From positions 124,001 to 188,000 of the IMG/VR virus record IMGVR_UViG_3300032245_001860: a stretch of DNA of 64,000 nucleotides. The stretch is one strand, 5' to 3'. A program made the translations under genes and the position numbers. This document shows, in pieces, positions 9,072 to 32,943 of this stretch. Each line of letters begins with the position of its first letter. The stretch's first letter is position 1. The notes below the pieces were generated by a model that was given only the letters and a program-made list of their open reading frames with translations, had not been told where the DNA came from and did no database searches.

Positions 9072-12000
9072 ATGAAAAAGGTTGCAAAAGGTGGAGCAAT
9101 TACTATCAATAGTTTCTTAAATGAAGGTGATAGAAATGTAGCCAGAAATCACATGCTAAAGACAGCCTCCTCAAATATGAGAGAAGCTGCAAAAATTGGT
9201 TTGCAATCATTATATGCTGATCCGAAAGAAGTTTTAGAAAAATACAAAGATTTTGATATTGTTAAAGAAATGCAAGCTCGTAAAGGAGCTAAATTACTTT
9301 GGGTTAGAGCCAGAGCAATAGATGCAGATACTGTCAATGCAAATGGTGACTATTTTTCAAAAGAAGAACTTCTCAAGGAACATGAAATTAAGGGTGAAAA
9401 AATCCCTTCATATAAAACTTTTGAAGGCGTTCCAATTTACACTAACCACAAAAATGATGATATAGAACAAGCTAAAGGAATGGTTGTCTATGCAGAATGG
9501 GACGATAAAGAAAACTGTGTTTATTGTACCTTCTTTGTAGATGAAGAAGCTTATCCTGACATCGCAAGAAATATTAGAACTGGAGTAATTCATGATGTTT
9601 CTATGGGATGTTCTGTTGACTATGGTATTTGTTCAAAGTGTAAAAATAAAGCTTACACTGAAAAAGATTATTGTGAATGTTTGAAAAAATTTAAAGGCAA
9701 GACAGATCCTCAAAGTGGCAAAAAAGTTTATGAAGAAAACTACAAGTTGAAATTTATTGAACTTTCTTGTGTAGGTGATGGTGCTTTTGAAACTTGTGAA
9801 ATTCAAGAAATCTATGATGTAGATGATGTTTTAAGTGCTGCTGAAGATTTAGAAAAGAAAGCCAATGAAATATGTTCAAATATTGTTTTGGCTTTTGATG
9901 GTGCTCCTTCAAACCCAGCTGATAGATTGGCATATGAAAACTGTTTAAGAACCGCTCAATTTGCTTCTAAGACAGCAATAAAACTTGCTCAAAACGCTGG
10001 TACTTTAGTGGGTGGTCCTCTATTAGCCGGACCTGGTGCAAATCAAAATTCTACTGTATCAGCAGTTCTACAAGGTTTAGGTATTGATCCAAGATCAGCG
10101 CTTAATGTTTTAGACTTGATCAACTTATCACTTAACTTTCTTGAAGTTGGTGTTATGAATTTGTTTGCAAGAAAAGATAATGTTGACCTTACTCACGTTG
10201 GCAAGATTACTAAAGCAATGGCTGATTTACAGGGCACCATGCAAGATATGATTGATGATGGTGTTGATGTAGGATCTGGACAAAGACCACAACCAATCAA
10301 TGCAGGACAACAAACACAACAAGCTGTCGCACCTGCTCAAAATCCAACTAATGCTAATGTTGGATTAGCAAACTACACTAATACTGGAAATGTTGGGAGA
10401 ATTATGGATTTTTCAAATCCAATTGAGTCTAATCCAGTAGGTGGGGGTGTAGCCTTAGCAAGTTCAAATATTAATTTAGTTTGGGCTTCAAGAGATGGTA
10501 AAAGAGAAGTATTTGCCAGTACAAATAATAATGTTAGAGAACCATCAAGCAAAGTTTTAAGACTTACGGAAAATTTATTATCTTTAAAGAATGCACTTAA
10601 TGATAGTGAAATTCAAAAGAGAGTAGAAACAGTCATTAGAGTTTCTAATGAGAGAAATAAAAACATAAAAACTAATGCGCCTATTTTGGCGGAGGGCAGA
10701 AATCAAATGGATCATTTTGCAAAAATCGCATCAGAGCAAAGAAAAAAACTTGCTGCTGCTGTCACCATCGACTTTAAAGTTGAAGATGCTTCTGGCAATA
10801 GAGTTGTTTTATCTACTGATGGATCTATAACTGGATACACTGGTGGAAAAAGAACAGCTTGGGAACCTATTTTAACTGAAAATCAAATCAATATGATGGA
10901 AAGTGGTCAAGGTACAAGAGTTGCCGCTGAACTTTTAAATGAGTATGGTAAGTTTGTTAGAACTGCTTTGCTTGATGTTAAAGAAAGATTTGATGACAGA
11001 GAAAAGCAACTTGAAGAAGTAAGATCTGGAGAAGGCTACAATGGTAAATCCAGATACGATGCTATTTCTGAACAACATAAACCTGCTGCTAATGTTACAA
11101 GAGAAGAAGCTTTACAAGACAAGCAAACTGGCATGGGTGCTGATGATGTTAAAGAAAAATTGCTTGCTGACGCTGGACTTTATGGTAGAAAAGTTAAGGA
11201 TTTAGAAGTCAAGAAGTCTTTATTTACCTTAATTGATGAAGTAAATAAGGGTGTTCCAACTGAAGTTCTTGAAAAAAGATTGCAAGAATGTAGAGCGGAC
11301 GGCAAGGCTTCTGCTCATGAGATTATGACAGCAACAATAAATGCTTTGGGTAAAGCAGTTGTTGCTGCGATGGAAACTCCTAATACAATTATGAGAGTTG
11401 CACAAACTCTTGTAAATGAAGAAGCACTTCCTGAAATGGTTGGAACAGCTGCTGCTGCTGCACCAATGGATGAAGCAAATGCAGAAAAGGCAGAATTCTT
11501 TGGAACAGAAGAAGGCCCTATGGATTCTGTTACAGCAGTCCTTAAACAACTTGGAGCAGCTGTAAGTTCTGAAATCACTGCAAAAGATCTTTCTGATGCT
11601 TTGTCGGTTGCAGTTGAAGAAGGCGAAATCACAAAAGAAGGCGTTACAAGAATTGCTGAACTTTTGATGGCTGATGCTAATATTCCTGAAGAAGGGCTTG
11701 ATGTTGAAGCAACTCCATCAAAAAATGAAGAGCTTAAGCAAGCTTTGACAAGTGCAGTTGATTCTGATAAGAATTTAATTTCTAAAGAAGATCTTAAGTC
11801 CGCTATTTCTGCTATGGCAATGTCAACAGAAGAAGCTGGAGTTACACCAGACGAAGTTGTCGATACAGTTGACAGCATGCCTGAAAATCAACTTGTAGCT
11901 GCAATTAATAGAGCAAAAACTGCTTCAGCAACCGAAGCCAGATTGAGAGCAAGAGCAAGAAGAGAATTCTGGGGTGTCAAAATTGCCTCCACAAAAGATA

Positions 12001-13289
12001 TTAGCAATAATGTTATTGGCTGGCTTGCTGATTATTCTACAAACTTTGATATTTCTACCAAGAAAATTGCTTTAGCTGCTAAGAGACTTTGTGAAGATTA
12101 TGAAGTTGCTGAAAGATTGGTAGCGAAGGCCATTGAAACAAAAAATTCAATGGAAAAAACTGCTGGAATGAAGGTTACTCAAAACAAAACTGAATCTCTT
12201 ACTTTTGTTTGTACTGCAGAAGATTTAGATGGTATTTCTCCATCAGACGAAGGCTTTGAAGAATCATTCAAACAAAAGGCTATTTCTGTTCTCCAAGGTC
12301 ATGGATTTACTGTTGATCCAGGGACATTTACATTTACAGATTTGAATGTAAGTAGTACCGGAGATATTACAGCAAGAGTTTCAACAAATGTTACTAAATC
12401 TTTTGATGTTGATGAATCAACTGAAATGGATGCAGAATCACCTGTAGATGAATCTATTGAAGGGACTGTTGAAGGTCCTGTTCAAAATGGCGAAATTGTC
12501 ATGACAGATGCTGCAAGAGTTGCAAGAAGAGAAAGAAGAGCACAACTTTTAGCAAGATATGCTCAAGTTCCTGGTATGGGTGCTGCACCTACTGGACCAG
12601 CCCCTGGTCCAGTAGATCCTAATCTTGGAATCGGAGCTGCACCTGCAGCAACTGATCCTGGTATTTTAGGTATGACTGGTGGAACTCCTGAAGGAGAAGA
12701 TGAAGACCCTATGGCATCAGGAGACACAGAACCAGGCGAAAAGAAACCTTGGGGAAGCATTTGTCCAGTTTGTGGATCTGATGATGTAAACATTTCAGAA
12801 TCTAATGCAGACTGTCAATCATGTGGAACAACTTACAAGATTCTTCAATCTATTGAACTTATTTCACTTGGTGAAAAGGGTAAGGATGGAGCTGCACCTG
12901 AAGAAGGTGGAGAAGATCTTATGGGTGGTTTAGGTGAAATGACTGCACCTGCAGAAACTCCTATGCCAGGTGCTGAAGCTGGAATGGGTGCTCCTGCAGC
13001 TCCTGCAGCTCCAGGTATGGCTCCTGTAGCTAACCTTAAATCAATGTTTAGATTAGCTGCAACTGTAGATTCTGATGTATATCTAAGAACAGCAATGCCA
13101 GACTTTGATAGAGCAACAGAGAAGAGATTGCCAGTAGGTATGATCTGTCCAAGTTGTGGTTCAAGAGAAGCACACAAAGTTAGTAATAATACCTTCTGCT
13201 ATGACTGTGGAAACTATTCAAAAACAACAGTTGCATCCAATAAGAAGAATCCTTCAAAACTTGATGTAACTATCACATGGATTGATTAA
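9072..13289 (+). CDS. Prohead maturation protease fused to a long scaffold/internal-head region with two C-terminal zinc ribbons
   Basis: N-terminal HK97/assemblin-type protease motifs NANGDYF, PIYTNH (His), DVSMGC (Ser), FIELSCVGDGA. Long acidic Ala-rich middle. CPVC..CQSC and CPSC..CYDC ribbons. Confidence 0.75.
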   Translation: MKKVAKGGAITINSFLNEGDRNVARNHMLKTASSNMREAAKIGLQSLYADPKEVLEKYKDFDIVKEMQARKGAKLLWVRARAIDADTVNANGDYFSKEELLKEHEIKGEKIPSYKTFEGVPIYTNHKNDDIEQAKGMVVYAEWDDKENCVYCTFFVDEEAYPDIARNIRTGVIHDVSMGCSVDYGICSKCKNKAYTEKDYCECLKKFKGKTDPQSGKKVYEENYKLKFIELSCVGDGAFETCEIQEIYDVDDVLSAAEDLEKKANEICSNIVLAFDGAPSNPADRLAYENCLRTAQFASKTAIKLAQNAGTLVGGPLLAGPGANQNSTVSAVLQGLGIDPRSALNVLDLINLSLNFLEVGVMNLFARKDNVDLTHVGKITKAMADLQGTMQDMIDDGVDVGSGQRPQPINAGQQTQQAVAPAQNPTNANVGLANYTNTGNVGRIMDFSNPIESNPVGGGVALASSNINLVWASRDGKREVFASTNNNVREPSSKVLRLTENLLSLKNALNDSEIQKRVETVIRVSNERNKNIKTNAPILAEGRNQMDHFAKIASEQRKKLAAAVTIDFKVEDASGNRVVLSTDGSITGYTGGKRTAWEPILTENQINMMESGQGTRVAAELLNEYGKFVRTALLDVKERFDDREKQLEEVRSGEGYNGKSRYDAISEQHKPAANVTREEALQDKQTGMGADDVKEKLLADAGLYGRKVKDLEVKKSLFTLIDEVNKGVPTEVLEKRLQECRADGKASAHEIMTATINALGKAVVAAMETPNTIMRVAQTLVNEEALPEMVGTAAAAAPMDEANAEKAEFFGTEEGPMDSVTAVLKQLGAAVSSEITAKDLSDALSVAVEEGEITKEGVTRIAELLMADANIPEEGLDVEATPSKNEELKQALTSAVDSDKNLISKEDLKSAISAMAMSTEEAGVTPDEVVDTVDSMPENQLVAAINRAKTASATEARLRARARREFWGVKIASTKDISNNVIGWLADYSTNFDISTKKIALAAKRLCEDYEVAERLVAKAIETKNSMEKTAGMKVTQNKTESLTFVCTAEDLDGISPSDEGFEESFKQKAISVLQGHGFTVDPGTFTFTDLNVSSTGDITARVSTNVTKSFDVDESTEMDAESPVDESIEGTVEGPVQNGEIVMTDAARVARRERRAQLLARYAQVPGMGAAPTGPAPGPVDPNLGIGAAPAATDPGILGMTGGTPEGEDEDPMASGDTEPGEKKPWGSICPVCGSDDVNISESNADCQSCGTTYKILQSIELISLGEKGKDGAAPEEGGEDLMGGLGEMTAPAETPMPGAEAGMGAPAAPAAPGMAPVANLKSMFRLAATVDSDVYLRTAMPDFDRATEKRLPVGMICPSCGSREAHKVSNNTFCYDCGNYSKTTVASNKKNPSKLDVTITWID

Positions 13290-15756: not shown

Positions 15757-16611
15757 ATGTCAATGATTAAAAGAAATACAAATGAGCAAAGAGAAGCCAT
15801 TATTGCAATGGCTCTCGAGACCCCAGAGGGTCGCACAGCTCTCGCACAAGCCATGGTTGAGCCAATCAAGACTTCCTTGATGTACCAAGCTATTGGTAGA
15901 AAGCTTCTCATGGTTGATGAGCTCCCACAAGGCGCTCTTGCAAGATATGAGAGAGACGTAGCAGTTAAGTCCTATGTCATTCCTAAGAGAGGTGCTGTTC
16001 CATCAGCTGAAGTTGAAGCAGAAGAGCTCATCGTTCCAACAATTGAACTTGCTGCTCATCCTCAAATTCGCTTGAATGAAATCAGACAAAGAAGATTCTA
16101 CATTGTCGATAGAGCTCAAGTCCGTGCTAAGGACTCCCTCCAAAGACAAGAAGATACTGAAGTCTTCAAGGTTATCAACGCAGGTGTTCCAACTGACCAA
16201 TCTATCTCTGTTTCCGGTACCCTCCAACCAGAGAACATTAACCTTGCTCTTACTCTTATTGAAGAGCACGAATTGATTGGTGCTAAGGTTGTTCTTCACC
16301 CACAAAGATACAAAGATATTAGAAACTGGGGCAAGGAATTCTTTGATGAGGCAACTCAAAGAGATATCCTCATGACTGGTCTTTATGGCCACATCTACTC
16401 AGCTGACATCCACGTTTCTACAATGGTTCCTAAGAACTCTGTTTACGTTCTTGCTCCAGCACAGTTCTGTGGTGCACTTCCAGTTCGCCAAGACATTACT
16501 GTTCTCCCAGCAGACGATCCAAAGAGACTTAGACTTGGATGGGTTGTTTATGAAGAGCTCGGATTTGCTCTCATTAACGACTATGCAGTTTCAAGAATCA
16601 CCGTTTCCTAA
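15757..16611 (+). CDS. Major capsid protein, HK97 fold (short, encapsulin-like, no delta domain)
   Basis: 284 aa; EPIKTSLMYQAIGRKLL..., AQVRAKDSLQRQEDTEVF, GLYGHIYSADIHVS, GWVVYEELGFAL; strong SD, biased codons, strong terminator behind it. Confidence 0.85.
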   Translation: MSMIKRNTNEQREAIIAMALETPEGRTALAQAMVEPIKTSLMYQAIGRKLLMVDELPQGALARYERDVAVKSYVIPKRGAVPSAEVEAEELIVPTIELAAHPQIRLNEIRQRRFYIVDRAQVRAKDSLQRQEDTEVFKVINAGVPTDQSISVSGTLQPENINLALTLIEEHELIGAKVVLHPQRYKDIRNWGKEFFDEATQRDILMTGLYGHIYSADIHVSTMVPKNSVYVLAPAQFCGALPVRQDITVLPADDPKRLRLGWVVYEELGFALINDYAVSRITVS

Positions 16612-16628: not shown

Positions 16629-16663
16629 AAAAAAAGACCCTTCTTCGGAAGGGTCTTTTTTTT
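16629..16663. terminator. Bidirectional Rho-independent terminator with a cUUCGg tetraloop
   Basis: A7-GACCCTTC-TTCG-GAAGGGTC-T8. Confidence 0.9.
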
Positions 16664-16681: not shown

Positions 16682-16710
16682 TTTACAAAAAGTAGTTTTA
16701 AATGTAAAAT
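16682..16710 (+). promoter_or_regulatory. Sigma70-type promoter of the sugar operon (leaderless)
   Basis: TTTACA-N17-TAAAAT, ending 7 nt before ATG 16718; no SD. Confidence 0.7.
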
Positions 16711-16717
16711 AAAAAAA

Positions 16718-17434
16718 ATGAATATATTAATTCCTATGGCTGGATTAGGCTCAAGATTTCCAAATTCCAAACTTCCAAAGCCACTTATCAATGTCAATGG
16801 TAAACCTATGATACAAAGAGCAGTTGAATCAATGGGCATTGATGGTAAATTGATTTTCATAACTCGACTTGAACACAATTTTGAATTTCAATTAGATAAA
16901 AAACTTAAAGATTTATTTCCAGATTCCAAAGTCATATCAGTCGATTATTTGACTGAAGGTCCAGCATGTACAGCCATGCTTGCTAAAGATCTAATTGACA
17001 AAGATGAACCATTGATTATAGCAAATTGTGATCAAATAATGAATTGGGACCATGAGACTTTTAATTTATTTTGCAAAACATATCCTCATGATGGTTTTGT
17101 TGTAACTTATTTTGCTAACACTGAAAAAAACAGCTATGTAAATATTCGAAATAATGGATTTGCAAAAGAGTTAAAAGAAAAGCAAATAATTTCCAATATT
17201 TCGACCAATGGGATTCATTTTTGGAAAAAAGGTAGCGATTTTGTACAAAGTGTTATAAGGATGATTGAAAAAAACGACCGTGCACCAAACGGAGAATTTT
17301 ATATAGCTCCATCTTATAATTATCTTATTGAAGAAGATAAAAAAATTGGTATCTATCATATCCCTAACTGTCAACATTGGGCAGTTGGAACAGAAGAAGA
17401 TTTAGAGGAATATTTGAGGATTAATAATGACTAA
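16718..17434 (+). CDS. Sugar/polyol-phosphate nucleotidyltransferase (true start 16718, not 16385)
   Basis: MNILIPMAGLGSRF..PKPLI.V.GKPMI, TEGPACT, IANCDQ, EFYIAPSYN, WAVGTEED. Confidence 0.85.
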   Translation: MNILIPMAGLGSRFPNSKLPKPLINVNGKPMIQRAVESMGIDGKLIFITRLEHNFEFQLDKKLKDLFPDSKVISVDYLTEGPACTAMLAKDLIDKDEPLIIANCDQIMNWDHETFNLFCKTYPHDGFVVTYFANTEKNSYVNIRNNGFAKELKEKQIISNISTNGIHFWKKGSDFVQSVIRMIEKNDRAPNGEFYIAPSYNYLIEEDKKIGIYHIPNCQHWAVGTEEDLEEYLRINND

Positions 17435-18077
17435 CGATGAAATTATCAAAAACGACTTGGTTGCAGAAATTAGAATGTTTTCTGATGTAGATGACCATGA
17501 CTATAACGAAGATTTTTTTAGAATGAAACACCCTGGTATGCTTCCATGGCCAAAAGGTGGAGTCAAGACAGAATTTAGTGCTTGGAATAGATCTCAATTA
17601 ACTAAACATTTTTTGAAGGTTGCTCCACATGCTAAGGCTATTCTTGAAATTGGAGTTCACAGAAATGGTGAAGATTCTTCTACTTGGTGTTTTTTGAATT
17701 ATAAAAATAAAGACACATTTTATTTTGGTATTGATATTGTTGACAAATCTTTTTTAGATGATGAAGAAAATAATATTTATACTTTACAAGAAAATTCCTC
17801 ATACACAGAAAAGATTATGAAGGTTATTAGATCCAAAGGTATTGAAAAATTTGACTTCATTTTTATCGACGGTAAGCATAGTATCAATCAAGTATTAGAC
17901 GATTGGAAGTTTACTGAATACTTAGCAGATGGTGGTATTGTTGGCTTCCATGATACAAATTGTCATCCAGGGCCAATGTTATTTGTTGATCATCTTAATA
18001 CTGAAAAGTATAATGTTGAAAAGTGCTGTAAAACTTGGCTTGTTGATTATGGTATTTCATTTGTTTCAAGAAAATGA
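17427..18077 (+). CDS. Class I SAM-dependent methyltransferase (Methyltransf_24-like)
   Basis: ILEIGV, FDFIFIDGKHS...DDW, LADGGIVGFHD. Confidence 0.8.
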   Translation: MTNDEIIKNDLVAEIRMFSDVDDHDYNEDFFRMKHPGMLPWPKGGVKTEFSAWNRSQLTKHFLKVAPHAKAILEIGVHRNGEDSSTWCFLNYKNKDTFYFGIDIVDKSFLDDEENNIYTLQENSSYTEKIMKVIRSKGIEKFDFIFIDGKHSINQVLDDWKFTEYLADGGIVGFHDTNCHPGPMLFVDHLNTEKYNVEKCCKTWLVDYGISFVSRK

Positions 18078-18400
18078 TTATAGATAATATTTCTAACATG
18101 TTCAGAGGCTGGTTCATTGGAAACTTTGAACCAGCTATTTTCAAATCTAAAGATTTTGAAGTTGGAATTCTTTTTCATCCTAAAGGCGAAAAATGGCCTA
18201 AACATTATCATAAAGAAGCAGTAGAAGTTAATGTTTTAATGTCTGGTAGAATGACAATTAATGGAAAACTATTATCATCTGGTAATATATTTCTTATTGA
18301 AAAAAATGAAATTGCTGATCCTGAGTTTTTAGAAGATTGTACAATTGTATGTGTAAAAACTCCATCTATTCCTGGAGATAAATATGAGGTCAAAGAATGA
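18074..18400 (+). CDS. Cupin-domain protein
   Basis: GWFIGNFEP, KHYHKEAVE.NVLMSG cupin metal motif; ATGA overlaps at both ends. Confidence 0.8.
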   Translation: MIIDNISNMFRGWFIGNFEPAIFKSKDFEVGILFHPKGEKWPKHYHKEAVEVNVLMSGRMTINGKLLSSGNIFLIEKNEIADPEFLEDCTIVCVKTPSIPGDKYEVKE

Positions 18401-19572
18401 TTTTTGTAGATGAAATTGATTCGAATAAATACATCAAAGGTTTTTATTATTTAGAGTCTTCAAAAGGTGTTAGAGATGCAGCATGGAATCTTGCTATTGG
18501 ACAGAGTGTTGGAAATCCATTAGTTAGATTGGAAAGAGAAACAGATGAACTTTTTGCAAATCATTCTTGCGTAGTAAAAAACTGCCCTGATTTAGATGCA
18601 AACTCTGGACGTGTAGAAATTGGTTTCCCAGTATCTAATATTGATTTCGCATCTGACGGTATTTCCCAGTTGCTTTGTTTTCTTATGGGTGGACAATTAG
18701 ATATTGATACCATTGAAACATGCTGGCTTGAAAAGCTAATTATTCCTGACTGGGTAATTGAAAAATATTTCAAAATGCCAAAATTTGGTATCACTGGGGC
18801 AAGAGAGTATACCAAGTCATATGACAAGCCTTTATTAGGCGGTATTTGCAAACCAAAAACTGGAATTAGCCCTGATATTCTTTTAGATATGGTCAAAGAA
18901 ATGGTTGATGGTGGAGTTAATTTTATCAAAGAAGATGAAATTATGGCCAATCCTGAATGCTGTTTGCTTGAAGAAAGAGTTTCTCTTATCTCAGATTACA
19001 TCAGAGATAAGAATGTGGTTTATTGTTTCTGTATTAATTCTGATCCAGCACATATTTTAGAGAGAGTCAAGTTTGTTCATCAAGAAGGTGGAAATGGCAT
19101 CCATATCAATTTCTGGTCTGGCATGGGTGTTTACAAGTCAGTAAGAGAATTGGACTTGCCATTGTTTATGCACTTTCAAAAAAGTGGTGACAAGATTCTT
19201 ACAAATAAAAAGCATGCGTTCCATATTGATTGGAGTGTAATTTGTTATCTTGCTGGACTTATGGGTGTTGACTTCATTCATACTGGAATGTGGGGTGGAT
19301 ATGCAAGTGATGATGAAAATGACCTGAGAAATACTATGAGTATTTTGAATGCAAGAAATGTAGTGCCAGCATTGTCATGTGGCATGCATCCTGGAATCGT
19401 AAACACCATTACTGAAAAGTTTGGCATCAACTATCTTGCAAATTGTGGGGGAGCATTACATGGACACCCAAAAGGAACTGTTGCAGGAGCCAAAGCAATG
19501 AGGCAAGCTATCGACAAAACTTACGGTGAAGAATATTTTCAAGCTATAAATAAATGGGGCCTTGTTCAATAA
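18397..19572 (+). CDS. RuBisCO-like protein (form IV RLP)
   Basis: LLGGICKPKTG, GGVNFIKEDE, DFIHTG, PALSCGMHPG, GGALHGHPKGTVAGAKAMRQA; several carboxylase residues substituted. Confidence 0.9.
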   Translation: MIFVDEIDSNKYIKGFYYLESSKGVRDAAWNLAIGQSVGNPLVRLERETDELFANHSCVVKNCPDLDANSGRVEIGFPVSNIDFASDGISQLLCFLMGGQLDIDTIETCWLEKLIIPDWVIEKYFKMPKFGITGAREYTKSYDKPLLGGICKPKTGISPDILLDMVKEMVDGGVNFIKEDEIMANPECCLLEERVSLISDYIRDKNVVYCFCINSDPAHILERVKFVHQEGGNGIHINFWSGMGVYKSVRELDLPLFMHFQKSGDKILTNKKHAFHIDWSVICYLAGLMGVDFIHTGMWGGYASDDENDLRNTMSILNARNVVPALSCGMHPGIVNTITEKFGINYLANCGGALHGHPKGTVAGAKAMRQAIDKTYGEEYFQAINKWGLVQ

Positions 19573-19575
19573 AGC

Positions 19576-20940
19576 ATGCTAAAGCTTGTTGTTTTTGATT
19601 TAGATGGAGTTTTAGTTGAAGCAAAAGAAATTCATTTTGATGCTTTAAATTCTGCATTGAAAAATGTTGATGAAAAATATGTCATATCTTGGGAAGAACA
19701 TCTCAGAACATATGATGGCTTGAAAACATATGACAAACTAAAACTCTTATCTGAATATAAGGGTTTACCACTTGATAAGAGCATTCAAGAAAAAATATTT
19801 AATGATAAACAAATTTTCACAACAAGAGCACTTAATGATCTTCAAAAAAATCAAAAACTAATCGATATTTTTACCAAGTTAAAAGAAGAAAATTTCAAAA
19901 TAGCTTGTTGTTCAAATTCTGTAAAAAATACAGTGGATTTAGTTCTTGATAAGCTTGGCATTGATAAGTTTTTTGACTTAAAATTATCAAATGCAAATGT
20001 AAAATTTGCTAAACCTCATCCAGAAATCTATTGGAAAGCAATGTCTTATTTTGGAGCATTACCTGAAGAAACATTGATTATTGAAGATTCTCCTACTGGG
20101 TTAACTTCAGCATATAAATCTGGAGCTAAAGTATTAAGAGTAAAAGATCCTAATGATTATGATTTTGATAAAATACTTTCATCTTGCAATTCTGTAAAAC
20201 AAAATATTGAAAAATGGGCTGATCAAAAAATGAATGTAATTATTCCAATGGCTGGTCATGGCAGTAGATTTTCTCAAGCTGGATATACATTTCCCAAACC
20301 CTTAATAGAAGTACATGGTAAACCTATGATTCAAGTTGTTATAGATAACTTGAAAGTAGATGCTCATTTTATTTTCATTGTTCAAAAAGAACATAGAGAA
20401 AAATATAATCTTGATTCTATGCTTTCTTTATTAGCTCCAGGTTGCGATATTGTAGATGTAGATAAAGTAACAGAAGGAGCTGCTTGCACTGTATTATTAG
20501 GTAAAGAATTTATCAATAATGACAATCCTCTGGTAATAGCTAATTCAGATCAATTTGTAGAATGGAGTAGTTTAGATTTCTTTTACAAAATGAACGAACA
20601 AAACTTAGATGGTGGTATTGTTTCTTTTAAATCAACACATCCCAAATGGTCTTATGCAAAGGTAGATAGTCAGGGGTTTATTTTAGAAGTAGCTGAAAAG
20701 AAAACTATTTCTGATATTGCTACAGTAGGAATTTATTACTGGAAAAAAGGATCTGATTTTGTCAAGTATGCAGAACAAATGATTGATAAAAATATCAGAG
20801 TAAATAATGAGTTTTATGTATGTCCTGTTTATAATGAAGCTATTTTAGATGGACTTAAGTTTAAAACATTTGATGTGCCAAAAATGTGGGGGCTTGGCAC
20901 ACCTGAAGATTTAGATTATTACTTGGAAATGAATAAATGA
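19576..20940 (+). CDS. HAD-family phosphatase fused to a nucleotidyltransferase
   Basis: N-terminus FDLDGVL, CSNS, KPHPEIY, IEDSPTG (beta-PGM/CbbY-type HAD). C-terminus MNVIIPMAGHGSRF..PKPLI, IANSDQ, WGLGTPEDL. Confidence 0.88.
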   Translation: MLKLVVFDLDGVLVEAKEIHFDALNSALKNVDEKYVISWEEHLRTYDGLKTYDKLKLLSEYKGLPLDKSIQEKIFNDKQIFTTRALNDLQKNQKLIDIFTKLKEENFKIACCSNSVKNTVDLVLDKLGIDKFFDLKLSNANVKFAKPHPEIYWKAMSYFGALPEETLIIEDSPTGLTSAYKSGAKVLRVKDPNDYDFDKILSSCNSVKQNIEKWADQKMNVIIPMAGHGSRFSQAGYTFPKPLIEVHGKPMIQVVIDNLKVDAHFIFIVQKEHREKYNLDSMLSLLAPGCDIVDVDKVTEGAACTVLLGKEFINNDNPLVIANSDQFVEWSSLDFFYKMNEQNLDGGIVSFKSTHPKWSYAKVDSQGFILEVAEKKTISDIATVGIYYWKKGSDFVKYAEQMIDKNIRVNNEFYVCPVYNEAILDGLKFKTFDVPKMWGLGTPEDLDYYLEMNK

Positions 20941-21809
20941 AAAGACTAACTGCTATTTACTGGGTCAAGAATGAAGCAAGATATATTCCTGAGTGGATAG
21001 AATTTCACTTGATGCAAGGATTTGAACATTTTATACTTTATGATAACAATTCTACTGATGGAAGTCAAGAAATACTACGACCATATATTGATGCTGAAAT
21101 TTTGGAATTAAGATCATATCCAGCAGAAATGAAACAGAGATGTCTAAATAGGCCTTTAGGGGCAAAAAACTATTGGGTGGCTGAAACATGTATGCTTGAA
21201 CAAAGAAAGAAGTCAGACTGGCTTCATTTTCATGCTGTAGATGAATTTACATACTGCCCAGATGGTACAGACTTGAAAGATTTTCTTACAGAGTTTGATA
21301 AGTATGGTGGGCTTTCAGTTTGTTGGCAATGTTATAACTCAAATGGACATATAAATAGACCTGAAGGACTTGTAATTGAAAACTACAATGTGAGAGTCCC
21401 AGATCCAATGTGTCATGTTAAAACATTCCTTAAGGTTGGTCGTGCTAAGCAAACTTGTGGATCTTTGCACAATTGGGAATATATTGGAAACTATCAATCA
21501 GTCAATGAAAATCATAAACCTGTAGTGGGATCATTTTGTCCAGATGATTTTTCCTTCAATAGAATAAGAAATCATCACTATGTAACTATGTCTCGTGAAG
21601 AATTTGATATCAAGACAAATAAAGGTATTTTAGATTCAGCTTGGGCAGAAAACAGAAGAAGGCATAATTATGATTATCAATTTGATGATTACAATAATAG
21701 AGAACATATCTTCGATGATATTCTAAAACCTTGGGTACCTAAAGTAAAAGAAGCTATTATGAAAAGGTATCACACTAATAAAGATTTTTTACCTTTAATA
21801 AATCATTAA
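20937..21809 (+). CDS. Glycosyltransferase (GT-A fold, GT92/GT2-like)
   Basis: VKNEARYIPEWIEFH...GFEHFILYDNNSTDG, VDEF, INHY-like NHHYVTMSREEF. Confidence 0.75.
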   Translation: MKRLTAIYWVKNEARYIPEWIEFHLMQGFEHFILYDNNSTDGSQEILRPYIDAEILELRSYPAEMKQRCLNRPLGAKNYWVAETCMLEQRKKSDWLHFHAVDEFTYCPDGTDLKDFLTEFDKYGGLSVCWQCYNSNGHINRPEGLVIENYNVRVPDPMCHVKTFLKVGRAKQTCGSLHNWEYIGNYQSVNENHKPVVGSFCPDDFSFNRIRNHHYVTMSREEFDIKTNKGILDSAWAENRRRHNYDYQFDDYNNREHIFDDILKPWVPKVKEAIMKRYHTNKDFLPLINH

Positions 21810-21810
21810 A

Positions 21811-21840
21811 TATAAACCCATCGAAATCGATGGGTTTATA
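21811..21840. terminator. Bidirectional terminator between convergent genes
   Basis: TATAAACCCATCG-AAAT-CGATGGGTTTATA; includes the kinase stop codon. Confidence 0.8.
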
Positions 21841-22816
21841 TTTTTGCGACAGAAGCTCCATCAAAATCAAATTTAAAATTGAAAGGCTTGTTATTGTAAA
21901 ACTTTTGTTTGATTTTATTCTGAGCATATGAATCAGCAAAAAGCATCATAAAGCCCCCACCACCAGCTCCTAATATTTTTCCTCCCTTAGCTCCACAAAG
22001 CTTAGCTTCTTCATACATTTCATTGATTTCTAAATTAGAAATATCATCTGACACTTCTTTTTTAAGTTGCCAAGAATAATCAAGCATTTCACCAAAGTGT
22101 GTTAGATCTTTTTTAATTAAGTTAATTTTAAATTGTTGAGCTAATTCAACCATGGTTTTTATATTCTGAAAACTTTTATCATTATCAATCATTCTTTTGC
22201 TTTGATTTTTAAGAATGTCGTCAGCAGATCTACCTTTACTTGTATGCAGCAATATGAGGTTATTTTCAAGATATTCTATAGTATCTTCATCTAAAGTTAT
22301 TGTATTAGTTGAGACACCTCTATCAGCAAATTCATGAACATTGAATCCACCATAAGAACAAGCGTATTGGTCTTGTTTTCCAATAGGCTTTTTACATAAA
22401 TTAATTTCTATGATACAGGCTAACTCTGCCAATGAACCTTTACTTAGTATCTCTTCTGAATATTTATAATTTTCTATTGCTTTGATTAATCCAACAGCGA
22501 AAGCACTTGAAGCACCCATTCCTGTTCCATTGGAGGGTAAGTCGGAAATAGAGGCTATTTCGATACCATTTGTAATATCAAAATACTTCAAGGTATGTTT
22601 TACGATGTCATGCTTTAAGTCATCTAAATTATTGACATTTTCTGTAATAGAATAGCTCAATCTAATGGAATCATCAAACTTTTTATTCAATGATATATAT
22701 AAATACTTATTTATAGAAGCAGAAACGACCATTCCAGGGCTTTGGTTGTAAAAAGAAGATAAATCAGAACCGCCCCCAAAAAAACTTATTCTAAATGGAG
22801 TTTTACTTACTATCAT
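21836..22816 (-). CDS. hddA: GHMP-family sugar kinase, D-glycero-alpha-D-manno-heptose-7-phosphate kinase-like (start MIVSK at 22816)
   Basis: TPFRISFFGGGSD, DLPSNGTGMGASSAF, IGKQDQY, KILGAGGGGF. Confidence 0.75.
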   Translation of the reverse strand: MIVSKTPFRISFFGGGSDLSSFYNQSPGMVVSASINKYLYISLNKKFDDSIRLSYSITENVNNLDDLKHDIVKHTLKYFDITNGIEIASISDLPSNGTGMGASSAFAVGLIKAIENYKYSEEILSKGSLAELACIIEINLCKKPIGKQDQYACSYGGFNVHEFADRGVSTNTITLDEDTIEYLENNLILLHTSKGRSADDILKNQSKRMIDNDKSFQNIKTMVELAQQFKINLIKKDLTHFGEMLDYSWQLKKEVSDDISNLEINEMYEEAKLCGAKGGKILGAGGGGFMMLFADSYAQNKIKQKFYNNKPFNFKFDFDGASVAKI

Positions 22817-22841
22817 ATGACTATTGTACAATTAGCATATG
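22814..22841. promoter_or_regulatory. Palindromic bidirectional leaderless promoter
   Basis: CAT-ATGACT-ATTGTACAAT-TAGCAT-ATG: the palindromic core gives a TACAAT -10 box on each strand, each 6 nt from an ATG. Confidence 0.65.
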
Positions 22842-23651
22842 AGAAACGCAATTATTACATACGCTCAAGGTAATGACTTTGTAGAAACATTAGATTCTGA
22901 AATTTTCTTAAAAAATCTTAACAAACATAAAACATTTAGGAAATATTGTTTTACAAAAGACCTCAATCAAAAGAACTTAGATATGTTGAGTAAATATTTT
23001 GATGAAGTTTTTGTTTGCTCAAATCCTATTTACAATAGTGCAAGAGATAGATTTATGTCTTATTACTTATGGATGATTGATAATTATAAAAATTTTGACA
23101 AAATTATGCATTTGGATTTTCGAGATATAGTTATTCAAAAAGATCCATTTGAGTTTATGAATAATCATTGGGACAAAGATATTTTTGTAGTGTCTGAAGG
23201 TATGAAAATTAAAGACAACTATTGGAATAAAATGGATATGACTTATTTCAATAACACTCAAATCCAATTTCATAAAGATGATTTTTCAGATTATTATGTT
23301 ATTAACGGTGGGACTATTGGCGGTAATATTTTTCCTCTTTCGCAATTATTTTTGATGCTTTGGGTCAACAGCAATAGAAACAGTCAATCAAATACTGACC
23401 AAGCTACATTAAATTACTTATATCCTTACCTCAAAGCTAACCCAAAAGTTATGGTATGCCATCCTCTTGAAGACAATTTTTGTGCTACTGGAGAGGGAAT
23501 TAAGTATGGTAATGTGCCAGTAAAATACAATGACACTCAAGTTGCAGATCAAAATTATGAAAACTATTATATTTTTCATCAGTGGGATAGAACAGAAGTT
23601 GCAGATAAAATTAGACAAAAACAAAAGGAATCTTTGTCTTTTGTGATTTAG
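22839..23651 (+). CDS. Putative glycosyltransferase (GT-A-like)
   Basis: RDRF..Y, IMHLDFRDIVIQKDPF (DxxD), INGGTIGG, DQATLNYL, HQWDR. Confidence 0.6.
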   Translation: MRNAIITYAQGNDFVETLDSEIFLKNLNKHKTFRKYCFTKDLNQKNLDMLSKYFDEVFVCSNPIYNSARDRFMSYYLWMIDNYKNFDKIMHLDFRDIVIQKDPFEFMNNHWDKDIFVVSEGMKIKDNYWNKMDMTYFNNTQIQFHKDDFSDYYVINGGTIGGNIFPLSQLFLMLWVNSNRNSQSNTDQATLNYLYPYLKANPKVMVCHPLEDNFCATGEGIKYGNVPVKYNDTQVADQNYENYYIFHQWDRTEVADKIRQKQKESLSFVI

Positions 23652-23686: not shown

Positions 23687-24322
23687 ATGTGGTACAAAAA
23701 AGCATTTATTCAATCAGAATTTTGGAACGAAGAGAAAACTAACGACCCAAAATCTTTGAAGGATGCTTTTTTTGGCGTCATAACAGATTCTAAAACAAGA
23801 ACCAATGATCCATATAAGATTTTTGGCAATCTAAAAACTTACAAAAACAAAGTACTTAATGAATCTCCAGAAATGACACAAGAAATAGAACAATCTTTCA
23901 ATGATGCTGTAGATTCATTAAAATCAGAATTTCCAGACTTTAATGAAAGCTCTAATAATGCTTCTGGTAATTGGCTTGAAATAGCTGAAAGTTATCTTGG
24001 CACTCCATATAAATTTGGTGGAGATGATGAAAGAGGTATTGATTGCTCAGCTTTCATTCAAAAAGTATTTCCAGATTTACCAAGAACTGCGAACGAACAA
24101 ATGAAAGTTGGTTCTGATGTCCCTATTGATGATATTTCTCAATGGCAGCCGGGAGATAGAATTTATTTTGATATGAATGCAAGATTAAGATCTGGAGACG
24201 CAGACCATACTGGTATTTATTTGGGAAATAATGAATTTATTCAAGCTTCATCAAGCAAAGGTGTAGTAAAGACACCTATCAATAATTTCTATGAACAAAA
24301 AATCATTGCTGTAAAGAGATAA
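23687..24322 (+). CDS. NlpC/P60 cell-wall endopeptidase with an MWYKKA leader
   Basis: YLGTPYKFGG, GIDCSAF (Cys), LPRTANEQ, PGDRIYF, HTGIYLG (His), FIQASS. Confidence 0.88.
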   Translation: MWYKKAFIQSEFWNEEKTNDPKSLKDAFFGVITDSKTRTNDPYKIFGNLKTYKNKVLNESPEMTQEIEQSFNDAVDSLKSEFPDFNESSNNASGNWLEIAESYLGTPYKFGGDDERGIDCSAFIQKVFPDLPRTANEQMKVGSDVPIDDISQWQPGDRIYFDMNARLRSGDADHTGIYLGNNEFIQASSSKGVVKTPINNFYEQKIIAVKR

Positions 24323-32028: not shown

Positions 32029-32943
32029 TTAATTTACCAGTCTATGTCTGCCTAATGTTTGCTGTGATACAACGCTCTTTAGTTGAAATTGATGTATGAC
32101 ATTGATACCAATTTCATTACTTATAAAGTCTCTTAGCTCTTTTGGCAGTTGAGGATTAGCTGTTTCCCAATAGGTTTGGAAATTTGGACTCCAACCATCT
32201 AAATCAATCCATTTTTGAACTAACTTTGTTATATTTTCAAGCAAATCAGAATCAAAATTAATTATATCTTGATTAGCTTGAAGTACCCTTGGAGCAATTT
32301 TAGTATATAAAGTTTCCTCAGGTAATCCAAAATAGCCTCTTGGTTTTCTCTCATCTCGCACAAAAATAAAAACTCTATCTTTTTTATACTCGTTAGAATA
32401 CTTTTCAACATCTAAGATAAACTTAAAAAGCATTACACTTGTCGTTGAATTGTTTGTAGGATATGGAAAATAAATGTCAGTGCTATACTTGAGAATGTCT
32501 TCTATCTCTGAAAAAGAAATATCTTTGGAAAAAATACAAGTATCTCCATTAGGTTGATTTATAGATTTACATAAAGAAAAAACAACTTCTTCGTCCGATG
32601 TAATCCAAGCTGTGCCCAAAACATAACAATTAGAAATTTCTGTAAGATTATCTAAAATATCAGAAGCAGAAAAACCAAATTGATTTCTTGAAGTGTCTGG
32701 CAACTCAACTCTTACATCTGAATTGTATATAATTCCCTTTCCTAATACAAAAATGTTTTTCATCATTTCTGTATTAGATGGGTCAACATACGACAACCCA
32801 TAATTAAGTTTCAATGAATCATTATTGTTTATTGCCAAACTATATTCAATTGTTGACTGAGATATATCATTTACAGAAATTGCTATATTGTAGGATTTTA
32901 CAAGATTGTTCAAGATCAATGCTGAAGCATAATTAGGTGTCAT
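32029..32943 (-). CDS. Hypothetical protein (tail operon)
   Basis: 304-aa ORF coupled to its neighbours. Confidence 0.6.
   Translation of the reverse strand: MTPNYASALILNNLVKSYNIAISVNDISQSTIEYSLAINNNDSLKLNYGLSYVDPSNTEMMKNIFVLGKGIIYNSDVRVELPDTSRNQFGFSASDILDNLTEISNCYVLGTAWITSDEEVVFSLCKSINQPNGDTCIFSKDISFSEIEDILKYSTDIYFPYPTNNSTTSVMLFKFILDVEKYSNEYKKDRVFIFVRDERKPRGYFGLPEETLYTKIAPRVLQANQDIINFDSDLLENITKLVQKWIDLDGWSPNFQTYWETANPQLPKELRDFISNEIGINVIHQFQLKSVVSQQTLGRHRLVN

What the first reader, a model, noticed from the sequence alone, without database searches (positions are those of the whole stretch)
16718..21809. Phage-encoded RuBisCO-like protein at the centre of an apparent new nucleotide-sugar pathway
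Seen: a translationally coupled operon of nucleotidyltransferase, methyltransferase, cupin, RLP, HAD phosphatase/nucleotidyltransferase fusion and glycosyltransferase. By-eye alignment to spinach RbcL: K175/K177 (CKPK), carbamylated K201 with D203/E204 (IKEDE), H327, S379 and G403/G404 are kept. E60 is G, N123 is G, H294/R295 are Q/K and loop-6 K334 is Y. Established: such form IV proteins do not fix CO2; they enolise, isomerise or decarboxylate sugar-phosphate-like substrates (methionine salvage, apionate catabolism). RuBisCO enolisation alone epimerises RuBP to xylulose-1,5-bisphosphate, which CbbY-type HADs dephosphorylate. Inference: the RLP (with or without the cupin) rearranges a pentose or other ketose phosphate, the HAD trims a phosphate, the nucleotidyltransferases activate it, and the GTs and methylase attach and cap an unusual ketose, branched sugar or polyol. 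That would be a biosynthetic RLP role in a virus, which I do not know to be described.
Basis: partly seen in the sequence, partly recalled or inferred. Interest (0 to 1): 0.9.

Follow-up and report, generated by a model that had tools for sequence, protein, structure and literature searches.

The report
Phage RuBisCO-like protein in sugar-activation cassette
A jumbo phage carries a non-CO2-fixing relative of RuBisCO locked into a widely conserved gene cassette with a sugar-nucleotide-forming enzyme and a small cupin, which points to a so far undescribed biosynthetic (glycan-building) job for this enzyme family.

Summary
Window 16718-21809 is a terminator-bracketed, tightly overlapping operon of nucleotidyltransferase, methyltransferase, 108-aa cupin, RuBisCO-like protein (RLP), HAD-nucleotidyltransferase fusion and GT-A glycosyltransferase. 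It lies just after the major capsid gene of a 316-kb phage.

It belongs to a well-supported clade outside MtnW, OiaX-like and form III-like groups.

These sit together in every related locus with enough flanking DNA, and next to RLPs only 33-41% identical. RLP is fused to the NTase in both orders. Most loci add a short GDPD-like protein, about half the methyltransferase. The HAD and this glycosyltransferase are particular to this phage.

Rare RLP-less variants put other sugar-phosphate enzymes there: RpiB fused to the NTase, or a PMM-type mutase in the RLP's slot. The basal member of the clade sits in what looks like a bacterial sugar-catabolic cluster.

Best reading: the RLP enolises or isomerises a sugar phosphate, probably a pentose phosphate, that is then nucleotide-activated, methylated and used for a glycan. 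The substrate and product are unknown.

Phage RLPs were already reported in 2018/19 without a function, and the pathway link appears new.

The parts
16629..16662 (+). Intrinsic terminator after the major capsid gene; it marks the upstream edge of the operon
   Evidence: 15-bp stem with 5 GC pairs followed by a T-run
16682..16710 (+). Sigma-70-like promoter match (TTTACA-17-TAAAAT) 8 nt before the first ATG
   Evidence: 10 of 12 consensus matches. This is a consensus match only.
16718..17434 (+). Nucleotidyltransferase NT1 (238 aa), the conserved partner of the RLP
   Evidence: phrog_3980 at 3e-59. Weak hits to GlmU, RmlA, GalU and IspD models. GxGxR loop intact. Best PDB hit 4evw at 2e-9, with HddC at 9e-6. 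An orthologue lies upstream of the RLP in 54 of 58 loci. The longer ORF from 16385 overlaps the capsid gene and is not the real start.
17427..18077 (+). Class I SAM methyltransferase (Methyltransf_24 type)
   Evidence: Pfam 4e-7, above the cut-off. Homologues occur in 29 of 58 RLP loci and 56 of 79 cupin-anchored loci. It is 45% identical to L053:11700-12341.
18074..18400 (+). Minimal monocupin (108 aa), a conserved partner of the RLP
   Evidence: phrog_24762 at 4e-35. AF2 pLDDT 96.4. Foldseek probability 1.0 to cupins, including 104-aa archaeal phosphomannose isomerases. Invariant H44, H46, E51, N53, E79, D102, K103. Adjacent to the RLP in 53 of 58 loci and in deep-branching loci.
18397..19572 (+). 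RuBisCO-like protein (391 aa) of the phage-type clade
   Evidence: PF00016 at 6e-33. The best NCBIfam score is only 155 bits (form III model, cut-off 497). Clade support is SH-aLRT 100, apart from MtnW, OiaX-like and form III-like groups. Signature: GGQxDI, KPK, KEDE, FQ(K/R)SG, HxGMxGGY, SCG, GG.
19576..20940 (+). HAD-IA (beta-phosphoglucomutase-family) domain fused to a second nucleotidyltransferase of the same phage family
   Evidence: HAD_2 at 1.5e-25 and PGMB-YQAB at 6e-27. NTP_transferase at 1e-11 and phrog_3980 at 4e-81. HAD motifs I-IV are intact. It occupies the slot that closest relatives fill with a methyltransferase and a GDPD-like protein. The same fusion occurs in RLP-less locus L149.
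20937..21809 (+). GT-A fold glycosyltransferase (GT92 / GT2_4)
   Evidence: Pfam 3e-19 and 8e-15. It has no homologue in the 57 other RLP loci.
21808..21843 (.). Hairpin between the convergent glycosyltransferase and kinase genes; a likely two-way terminator
   Evidence: 16-bp stem, called on the minus strand
21836..22831 (-). GHMP sugar kinase related to heptose-7-phosphate anomeric kinases (HddA, WcbL)
   Evidence: NF049969 at 5e-46, below its cut-off. PDB 3k85 at 9e-35 and 4usk at 4e-32. phrog_34407 at 6e-74. Kept at the same place in L001 and L002 at 54-55% identity. A GHMP kinase is also present in the Bellamy cluster.
22839..23651 (+). Unknown 270-aa protein conserved with the cluster in the two closest relatives; whether it belongs to the pathway is uncertain
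   Evidence: No Pfam, NCBIfam or PHROG hit. It is 59-60% identical in L001 and L002 at the same position.

Best explanation
**What the operon is.** It is this jumbo phage's version of a widespread phage cassette. The invariant core is a sugar-phosphate nucleotidyltransferase, a 108-aa metal-type cupin and a phage-clade RuBisCO-like protein. Most relatives add a short GDPD-like phosphodiesterase-fold protein, and about half add a Methyltransf_24 methylase.

**The RLP (inferred).**
- It cannot carboxylate, because K334, N123, E60 and H294 are replaced.
- It keeps the carbamate-lysine, Asp and Glu metal site, K175 and K177, and one phosphate-binding site.
- It therefore most likely enolises a keto-sugar phosphate and re-protonates it. 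That gives an isomerisation, carbonyl migration or epimerisation.
- The most probable substrate comes from the pentose-phosphate pool.
- The cupin performs a further isomerisation or rearrangement. The NTase converts the product into a nucleotide-activated sugar.

**The extra genes in this phage (inferred).** They fit the logic of GDP-heptose synthesis:
1. A sugar omega-phosphate is made by the RLP and cupin.
2. The HddA-like GHMP kinase phosphorylates the anomeric position.
3. The HAD domain removes or shifts a phosphate.
4. The fused NTase makes the NDP-sugar.
5. The methylase modifies it.
6. The GT-A transferase attaches it to a virion or cell-envelope target.

**Shown:** gene content, residue pattern, clade position, conserved linkage and fusions. 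**Inferred:** substrate, order of steps, product and target.
For: **Linkage**
- NTase to cupin to RLP is found in 53-54 of 58 RLP-anchored loci, which is every locus with enough upstream DNA.
- In 79 cupin-anchored loci, 75 have the RLP and 77 the NTase.
- The trio persists in the order RLP, cupin, NTase next to RLPs only 33-41% identical.

**Fusions**
- NTase-RLP (637 aa), RLP-NTase (667 aa) and a GDPD-like-RLP fragment.

**Glycan context**
- GT2, GT4, GT9 and GT61 transferases, SDR dehydratases and epimerases, GDP-mannose dehydratase, a sugar C-methyltransferase, Glf and UDP-glucose dehydrogenase lie around the trio.

**Sugar-phosphate enzymes at the same place in RLP-less variants, and on the same NTase family elsewhere**
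- RpiB is fused to the NTase in Synechococcus phage Bellamy, with the cupin and GDPD-like protein present.
- A PMM-type mutase sits in the RLP's slot in L140, and HAD domains in L149.
- DHBP synthase, a ribulose-5-P enzyme, is fused to the same NTase family in S-SKS1, which lacks the cupin and GDPD-like protein.

**Basal clade member**
- P0140 sits beside a cupin-type PGI-like protein, a split transketolase, an FGGY kinase and a class II aldolase.

**Active site**
- The metal triad, K175/K177 and the S379/G381/G403/G404 site are kept across the clade. The K334-to-Y change is invariant among the 24 clade members examined.

**Accessory enzymes**
- The GHMP kinase's nearest solved relatives are HddA and WcbL.
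- HddC is among the NTase's PDB hits.
- The HAD motifs are intact.
Against: - No biochemical datum exists for any member.
- The NTase cannot be assigned to anomeric-phosphate or alcohol-phosphate substrates. Its best solved relative, 4evw, is uncharacterised, and it has weak LicC, IPCT and IspD hits.
- Most relatives have no kinase, mutase or HAD. The heptose-like logic therefore cannot be the general mechanism.
- Relatives instead carry a GDPD-like protein whose role this model does not explain.
- Known RLP chemistry moves carbonyls inward (2,3-enediol) rather than making aldoses. A simple RpiB-like role is therefore not the obvious reaction for this fold.
- RpiB in Bellamy may be an addition rather than a replacement.
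- Radical-SAM genes and multiple methyltransferases nearby would also fit a SAM by-product salvage role.
- The target of glycosylation is unknown.
Confidence: 0.55

Rival explanations
1. **Activated phospho-alcohol or 5-linked NDP-pentose route.** The NTase acts on a primary phosphate, as in CDP-ribitol, CDP-methylerythritol or ADP-ribose-type compounds. The RLP and cupin work either before it on a pentulose-5-P, or after it on an NDP-pentose or NDP-pentulose that mimics the two-phosphate RuBP. The product is transferred as a phospho-sugar or phospho-polyol substituent, and the GDPD-like protein handles a phosphodiester.
For: - The NTase has weak hits to IspD, LicC (1jyk), inositol-1-P cytidylyltransferase and KdsB models.
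- Most loci lack any kinase or mutase that would make a sugar-1-phosphate.
- A phosphodiesterase-fold partner is conserved and can be fused to the RLP.
- RpiB and DHBP synthase, the NTase's fusion partners, both yield omega-phosphates.
- The distal site of the RLP keeps a basic residue (K/R295) and H327, so it could hold a second anionic group.
Against: - PF00483-type hits and the HddC, RmlA, GalU and MurU relatives point to anomeric phosphates.
- L140 has a PMM-type mutase in the RLP's slot.
- This window adds an anomeric-type GHMP kinase and a GT-A glycosyltransferase, which uses NDP-sugars.
- No LicD-, TagF- or CDP-alcohol-transferase-type enzyme was detected nearby.
Confidence: 0.25
2. **Salvage or detoxification module.** The RLP and cupin dispose of 5'-deoxyadenosine- or methylthioadenosine-derived sugars made by the many SAM-dependent methyltransferases and radical-SAM enzymes in these islands. 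The models are MtnW/MtnX/MtnD, or the R. rubrum RLP plus cupin methylsulfurylase.
For: - RLP, HAD and cupin mirror MtnW, MtnX and MtnD. An RLP-cupin pair is also known from the MTA-isoprenoid shunt (papers listed; the detail is from my own knowledge).
- Radical-SAM genes and one to three methyltransferases are frequent neighbours.
Against: - The RLP lies outside the MtnW clade, scoring 94-124 bits against cut-offs of 409-514.
- No MtnK, MtnP, MtnA or MtnB homologue appeared among the neighbouring genes that were annotated.
- The HAD is not conserved.
- Fusion to an NTase in both orders is hard to explain for salvage.
- The context is consistently glycan synthesis.
Confidence: 0.08
3. **Redirection of host carbon or nucleotide metabolism.** The RLP is an auxiliary metabolic gene that shifts pentose-phosphate flux toward nucleotides. 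It is not a glycan pathway enzyme, and the linkage to glycan genes reflects co-location in variable islands.
For: - Many carriers look like cyanophages. L053 has an SLH-OprB porin, and the cultured relatives of the NTase and cupin are Synechococcus phages. Cyanophages are known to carry pentose-phosphate genes (my own knowledge).
- An RpiB fusion exists.
Against: - Gene order and fusions are conserved down to 33% RLP identity, across phage lineages as different as a phage-G-like jumbo phage and cyanophage-like contigs.
- That is far more than island co-location would give.
- An NTase has no role in simple flux redirection.
Confidence: 0.07

Closest known systems
Phage 'form IV-like' RuBisCO-like proteins reported by Jaffe, Castelle, Dupont and Banfield (bioRxiv 10.1101/386292; also PMC6389311)
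   Same: - They are phage-encoded, including one on a roughly 200-kb phage.
- They are highly divergent and were placed as an outgroup to other RLPs.
- Key residues are only partly conserved.
- My tree gives the same picture.
   Different: - That work left the function open and does not mention nucleotidyltransferase, cupin, methyltransferase or glycosyl genes.
- I could not compare sequences directly, so identity of the two clades is inferred.
DK-MTP-1-phosphate enolase MtnW with MtnX (HAD) and MtnD (cupin) in methionine salvage
   Same: - The same three folds occur together: RLP, HAD phosphatase and cupin.
- The RLP acts as an enolase on a keto-sugar 1-phosphate using the conserved Mg2+ and carbamate site.
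   Different: - The window RLP scores 94-124 bits against cut-offs of 409-514 and lies in another clade.
- MtnW lacks K177, R295 and H327. This clade keeps K177 and H327 and has K/R at 295.
- The other salvage genes were not found.
- The HAD is not a conserved partner.
- The NTase partner has no counterpart in salvage.
Rhodospirillum rubrum RLP (5-methylthio-ribulose-1-P 1,3-isomerase) with the cupin methylsulfurylase, feeding DXP into the MEP pathway (IspD is an NTase)
   Same: - An RLP that migrates a carbonyl along a pentulose phosphate is followed by a small cupin.
- Further down that pathway comes a cytidylyltransferase.
- This is the closest mechanistic analogy (my own knowledge; related papers are listed).
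   Different: - No methylthio-sugar-supplying genes and no reductoisomerase were found.
- The context here is glycan synthesis, not sulfur salvage.
GDP-D-glycero-alpha-D-manno-heptose pathway (GmhA, HddA, GmhB, HddC)
   Same: - The window has an HddA/WcbL-like GHMP kinase, a HAD phosphohydrolase-family domain and an NTase with HddC among its solved relatives.
- The logic is ketose-P isomerase, then anomeric kinase, then phosphatase, then NTase.
   Different: - There is no SIS-type GmhA. The RLP and cupin would take that place.
- The HAD is of the IA/beta-PGM type, not the GmhB type.
- All scores are far below the equivalog cut-offs.
- The kinase and HAD are missing from most related cassettes.
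RLPs of D-apionate catabolism (OiaX / OiaT)
   Same: - They are non-carboxylating RLPs acting on keto-sugar-acid phosphates within sugar pathways.
- The OiaX model is the third-best hit.
   Different: - The score is 131 bits against a cut-off of 700, and the clade is separate.
- Those enzymes are catabolic and cellular.

Membership tests
RuBisCO large-subunit superfamily | Catalytic TIM-barrel domain (PF00016) with the KPK, K-x-D-E, S-x-G and GG motifs | tested here: met
   PF00016 at 6e-33 over residues 131-375. Motifs were aligned to form III 2cwx.
Bona fide carboxylating RuBisCO (forms I-III) | All catalytic residues, including E60, N123, H294 and loop-6 K334 | tested here: not met
   E60 to G, N123 to G, H294 to Q and K334 to Y, invariant in the clade members examined. 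The form III model scores 155 against a cut-off of 497.
MtnW / DK-MTP-1-P enolase | Score above the equivalog cut-off and placement in the MtnW clade | tested here: not met
   124 and 93 bits against cut-offs of 409 and 514. True MtnW (P0225, 706 bits) lies across a branch with SH-aLRT 100.
MtnW / DK-MTP-1-P enolase | Genomic association with MtnK/MtnA/MtnB/MtnX/MtnD | tested here: not met
   Neighbourhoods hold an NTase, cupin, GDPD-like protein, methyltransferases and glycosyltransferases. No MtnK, MtnA or MtnB appeared among the neighbouring genes that were annotated.
OiaX 3-oxo-isoapionate-4-P decarboxylase | Score above the equivalog cut-off | tested here: not met
   131 bits against 700. 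The OiaX-like representative P0207 is in another clade.
Phage 'IV-like' RLP clade (Jaffe et al.) | Phage-encoded, monophyletic, and outside all named RLP and RuBisCO groups | tested here: met
   A 32-row clade with SH-aLRT 100, separate from 79 other representatives. Carriers are IMG/VR contigs with phage genes. Direct comparison with the published sequences was not possible.
Cupin superfamily (the 108-aa protein) | Double-stranded beta-helix fold with the motif-1 HxH...E metal ligands | tested here: met
   AF2 pLDDT 96.4 and Foldseek probability 1.0 to many cupins. H44, H46 and E51 are invariant. No motif-2 histidine is conserved.
Sugar-1-phosphate nucleotidylyltransferases (PF00483, RmlA/GalU/HddC type) | GxGxR loop and a family-level score | tested here: inconclusive
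   The C-terminal domain of the fusion passes PF00483 (45 bits against 21). NT1 reaches only sub-threshold NTP_transf_3. Both have the GxGxR loop. Substrate class is not decidable.
HAD-IA beta-phosphoglucomutase family | HAD motifs I-IV and a family score | tested here: inconclusive
   Motifs are intact. PGMB-YQAB scores 95 bits against a cut-off of 153, and bPGM 86 against 189. Mutase and phosphatase cannot be told apart from sequence.
GDP-heptose-type pathway (GmhA/HddA/GmhB/HddC) | SIS-domain sedoheptulose-7-P isomerase GmhA | tested here: not met
   None of the cluster genes 15757-24322 matches a SIS-domain/GmhA family in Pfam or NCBIfam. The rest of the window was not scanned.
GDP-heptose-type pathway (GmhA/HddA/GmhB/HddC) | HddA-type anomeric kinase | tested here: inconclusive
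   The HddA model gives 5e-46 but 158 bits against a cut-off of 600. The nearest structures are HddA and WcbL.

The most novel reading that the evidence does not exclude
The phage-type RLP catalyses the committed step of a previously unknown route. That route turns a pentose-phosphate-pool metabolite into a new nucleotide-activated, probably methylated and possibly rearranged or branched sugar. Phages would use it to decorate their virions or remodel the host envelope. It would be the first anabolic, glycan-building function for the RuBisCO superfamily apart from CO2 fixation. It would also assign a function to the 'IV-like' RLPs that are abundant in aquatic viromes, and possibly to the novel RuBisCO-homologue groups first seen in the Global Ocean Sampling data.
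Probability: 0.45. Interest if true: 0.85.

Novelty: new variant of a known kind. Interest (0 to 1): 0.72.

Why it matters
- RuBisCO-like proteins are a textbook case of an enzyme fold re-used for new chemistry. Every assigned function so far is catabolic or salvage.
- This clade is large: 2726 clusters at 90% identity matched the window RLP at E <= 1e-3, the best 120 of them at 60-92% identity. It is almost entirely viral, has been known since 2018/19, and has no function.
- The strict linkage and fusion to a nucleotidyltransferase and a cupin gives a concrete, cheaply testable hypothesis. It would take three to five soluble enzymes, common sugar phosphates and LC-MS or NMR.
- It also exposes a family of phage NTases fused to different pentose-phosphate enzymes. 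That suggests phages build unusual activated sugars straight from the pentose-phosphate pool.
- The result bears on phage glycobiology: virion glycosylation, receptor masking and superinfection exclusion.

Tried and rejected
**Searches that found nothing**
- Megablast of the cluster and tblastn of the RLP against 50,697 GenBank phage records gave no match. No cultured phage in that collection carries this RLP.
- The genome-contig scan found only two short MAG contigs (3-5 kb). Both hold the same cassette and are probably mis-binned phage fragments. The scan used peptides from the window, so it says little about distant cellular homologues.
- Full-text searches for RuBisCO-like proteins together with nucleotidyltransferase, glycosyltransferase or polysaccharide terms found nothing relevant.

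**Function calls that stayed open**
- The cupin's function could not be read from its fold. Foldseek hits span isomerases, dioxygenases, lyases and dehydratases at similar scores.
- hhalign of the 108-aa cupin against the cPGI-type cupin next to P0140 gave E 0.11, so they are not demonstrably orthologous.
- Accessory-gene HMMs from related loci (WavE-like, DUF7796-like, SDR, APH-type kinase, DHQS-like, radical SAM) found nothing in the window. Accessory content is lineage-specific.

**Corrections and readings set aside**
- My first clustering merged the GDPD-like protein with the methyltransferase by single linkage. BLAST showed they are unrelated, and I corrected the counts.
- I rejected a recent foreign insertion: GC of the operon (0.32-0.34) matches the rest of the window.
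- I gave low weight to a DNA-hypermodification role, because no DNA-modification genes accompany the cassette in the loci examined.

Full report
**1. What is in the sequence**

The window is 100% identical to part of IMG/VR contig UViG_3300032245_001860, which is 315,852 bp long. It is phage DNA.
- A portal gene lies at 6575-8917 and an HK97-fold major capsid gene at 15757-16611.
- The capsid protein is 47% identical to that of Bacillus phage G.

Directly after the capsid gene comes a strong terminator (16629-16662) and a promoter-like site (16682-16710). Six + strand genes follow, running to 21809, where a 16-bp hairpin separates them from a convergent gene. Four of the five junctions overlap by 4-8 nt.

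The six genes are as follows.
- **NTase, 16718-17434.** It belongs to phrog_3980. The longer ORF from 16385 overlaps the capsid gene and is not the real start.
- **Methyltransferase, 17427-18077.** It is of the Methyltransf_24 type.
- **108-aa protein, 18074-18400.** It models with pLDDT 96 as a minimal cupin with an invariant HxH-x4-E motif.
- **RuBisCO-like protein, 18397-19572.**
- **HAD-NTase fusion, 19576-20940.** The HAD-IA domain is of the beta-phosphoglucomutase family. All four HAD motifs are intact.
- **GT92/GT2-type glycosyltransferase, 20937-21809.**

It is a GHMP kinase whose nearest solved relatives are the heptose-7-phosphate anomeric kinases HddA and WcbL.

**2. The RLP**

- Kept: K175 and K177 (KPK), K201/D203/E204 (KEDE), H327, S379, G381, G403/G404.
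- Replaced: E60 to G, T65/W66 to N/P, N123 to G, H294/R295 to Q/K, K334 to Y.
- These replacements are a signature conserved across the 24 clade members examined: AIGQSxGNP, GGQxDI, FQ(K/R)SG, HxGMxGGY, SCG.

Placement:
- Its best curated-model score is 155 bits (form III, cut-off 497). MtnW models give 94-124 bits and OiaX 131, all far below their cut-offs.
- A tree was built from 111 full-length sequences drawn from a HMMER scan of 1.84 billion representatives.
- In it the phage-type proteins form a 32-member clade with SH-aLRT 100, apart from all others.
- The other clades include true MtnW (706 bits), OiaX-like and form III-like groups.

**3. Is the neighbourhood conserved?**

Yes, but the core differs from the operon as read.
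- In 58 loci anchored on the RLP, an NTase of the same family lies about 1 kb upstream in 54, and the cupin about 0.3 kb upstream in 53. The exceptions are loci cut at the contig end.
- In 79 loci anchored independently on the cupin (449 viral contigs matched, best 80 kept), 75 have the RLP, 77 the NTase, 62 a short GDPD-like protein and 56 the Methyltransf_24 methylase.
- Deep-branching RLPs of the clade, 33-41% identical to the window's, still sit beside a cupin homologue and an NTase. The order there is RLP, cupin, NTase. hhalign gives E 4e-39 and 3.5e-37 for two of these cupins.
- Natural fusions exist as NTase-RLP (637 aa), RLP-NTase (667 aa) and a GDPD-like-RLP fragment.
- The HAD domain, this glycosyltransferase family and the GHMP kinase are not general. 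The kinase is shared only with the two closest relatives, L001 and L002. The HAD-NTase and the glycosyltransferase are unique to the window.
- In L001 and L002 that slot holds an FkbM-like methyltransferase, the GDPD-like protein and a third methyltransferase.
- The GDPD-like assignment rests on three things. The profile hits GDPD structures at 8e-7 and 7.5e-5. The HRG/EN/ExD/HD motif is invariant. The AF2 model's top fold matches are all GDPDs, though weak.
- The GDPD-like protein is absent from the window.

**4. Context**

Around the trio lie variable glycan genes:
- glycosyltransferases of families GT2, GT4, GT9 and GT61
- SDR dehydratases and epimerases, and a GDP-mannose 4,6-dehydratase
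- a sugar C-methyltransferase
- UDP-galactopyranose mutase and UDP-glucose dehydrogenase
- WavE-like, DUF7796 and DUF6071 proteins
- in one sub-group, an APH-type kinase, a DHQ-synthase-like cyclase and radical-SAM enzymes

One carrier encodes an SLH-OprB porin, which is typical of cyanobacteria. The cassette is thus shared between a phage-G-like jumbo phage and cyanophage-like contigs at about 60% protein identity. That implies transfer among phages.

**5. What the variants say about chemistry**

No cultured phage in GenBank has the RLP, but some have its partners.
- In Synechococcus phage Bellamy, the NTase is fused to RpiB (ribose-5-phosphate isomerase). The cupin homologue and a DUF7796 protein follow. 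A GDPD-like protein, a GHMP kinase, a HAD phosphatase and glycosyltransferases lie nearby.
- In S-SKS1, the same NTase family is fused to DHBP synthase, which uses ribulose-5-phosphate.
- Among the four RLP-less cupin loci, L140 has a PMM-type phosphomutase exactly where the RLP normally sits. L149 has NTase-HAD and HAD-NTase fusions.
- The basal member of the RLP clade (P0140, from a MAG) lies next to a cupin-type glucose-6-phosphate-isomerase-like protein. The same cluster holds a split transketolase, an FGGY kinase, a class II aldolase, an aldo-keto reductase, a GntR regulator and an ABC sugar transporter. It looks like a bacterial sugar-catabolic cluster.
- In most variants, the place next to this NTase is taken by an enzyme that interconverts sugar phosphates, most often of the pentose-phosphate pool.

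**6. Most likely mechanism**

Shown:
- an intact metal and enolisation site without the carboxylation residues
- strict linkage and fusion to an NTase and a cupin
- a glycan context

Inferred:
- The RLP enolises a keto-sugar phosphate and re-protonates it, giving isomerisation, carbonyl migration or 3-epimerisation. These are the reactions this fold is known to perform in the R. rubrum enzyme and as a RuBisCO side reaction (my own knowledge).
- The cupin carries out a further isomerisation.
- The NTase activates the product, and the methylase modifies it.

In this window the added HddA-like kinase, HAD domain and second NTase reproduce the logic of GDP-heptose synthesis: isomerase, anomeric kinase, phosphatase, NTase. 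The RLP and cupin would stand where GmhA stands, and the GT-A enzyme would use the product.

I put 0.55 on this general model, and considerably less on any particular substrate. Ribulose-5-P or xylulose-5-P is the leading candidate.

The main rival (0.25) is that the NTase makes a 5-linked NDP-pentose or CDP-polyol-type compound, with the GDPD-like protein acting on a phosphodiester. A SAM by-product salvage role (0.08) and a pure flux-redirection role (0.07) fit the fusions and conserved order poorly.

**7. Comparison with what is known**

- Phage RLPs are not new. Jaffe et al. reported about 90 'IV-like' sequences, including one on a roughly 200-kb phage, as an outgroup to other RLPs. They left the function open and do not mention NTase, cupin, methyltransferase or glycosyl genes.
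- The Global Ocean Sampling paper had already noted novel RuBisCO-homologue groups.
- Full-text searches found no paper linking RuBisCO-like proteins to nucleotide-sugar or polysaccharide synthesis.
- The gene is therefore a further member of a reported clade. The conserved cassette and the functional inference appear new. A biosynthetic role would be a new variant of RLP function.

**8. Limits**

- No biochemistry is available.
- The substrate class of the NTase is undecided.
- The role of the GDPD-like partner is unexplained.
- The target of the glycan (virion or host envelope) is unknown.
- Only the best 80 of 449 cupin-bearing contigs were examined.
- The cellular distribution of the clade was probed only through representatives.

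Noticed in passing
P0184 (583 aa): A TIR domain is fused to a RuBisCO-like protein of a different clade. TIR enzymes make ADP-ribose derivatives. An RLP domain attached to one hints at RLP chemistry on nucleotide-linked ribose, perhaps in a defence system.
   Followed up: no
L060:7001-8428 (Synechococcus phage S-SKS1, SWZG_00042): This is a fusion of the phage NTase family (phrog_3980) with a full DHBP synthase domain (PF00926, 5e-65). It is annotated only as DHBP synthase. It suggests nucleotide activation of a ribulose-5-P-derived C4 compound.
   Followed up: partly
L059:5847-7004 (Synechococcus phage Bellamy gp206): It is annotated 'phosphatase' but is an NTase fused to RpiB/LacAB (PF02502, 4e-32). 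The cluster also holds a double-NTase protein (gp209), GT61, DUF7796, a GDPD-like protein (gp213) and a GHMP kinase.
   Followed up: partly
L142 (IMGVR_UViG_GVMAG-M-3300023184-17_000001): A contig labelled as a giant-virus MAG carries an NTase-cupin108 fusion next to a GDPD-like gene, with no RLP. It is flanked by a DEAD-box helicase.
   Followed up: no
L053:19117-20589: A 175-kb viral contig carrying the RLP cassette encodes an SLH-domain OprB-type porin, which is typical of cyanobacterial outer membranes.
   Followed up: no
P0161 and P0179 (726 and 742 aa): An IF-2B-family (ribose-1,5-bisphosphate isomerase-like) domain is fused to a form III-like RuBisCO. Two steps of the AMP pathway are joined in one protein.
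   Followed up: no
L001:1311-2462: A LAGLIDADG homing-endonuclease-like ORF is inserted between the capsid gene and the NTase in a close relative of the window phage.
   Followed up: no
window 43172-63856: There is a run of five very large + strand ORFs (1096-1388 aa). Large ORFs also lie at 9072-13289 (1405 aa) and on the minus strand at 32943-37391 (1482 aa). None was annotated here. No tRNA genes occur in the window.
   Followed up: no
window 23687-24322: An NlpC/P60 peptidoglycan endopeptidase (PHROG tail/lysin families) lies just beyond the sugar cluster.
   Followed up: no
L057 (WTHI01000081.1) and L058 (DORI01000002.1): These are the only two hits in 185,579 species genomes. They are 3-5 kb contigs binned to a Methanobacteriota archaeon and a Crocinitomicaceae bacterium. 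They contain only the phage-type cassette, so they are likely binning artefacts.
   Followed up: partly
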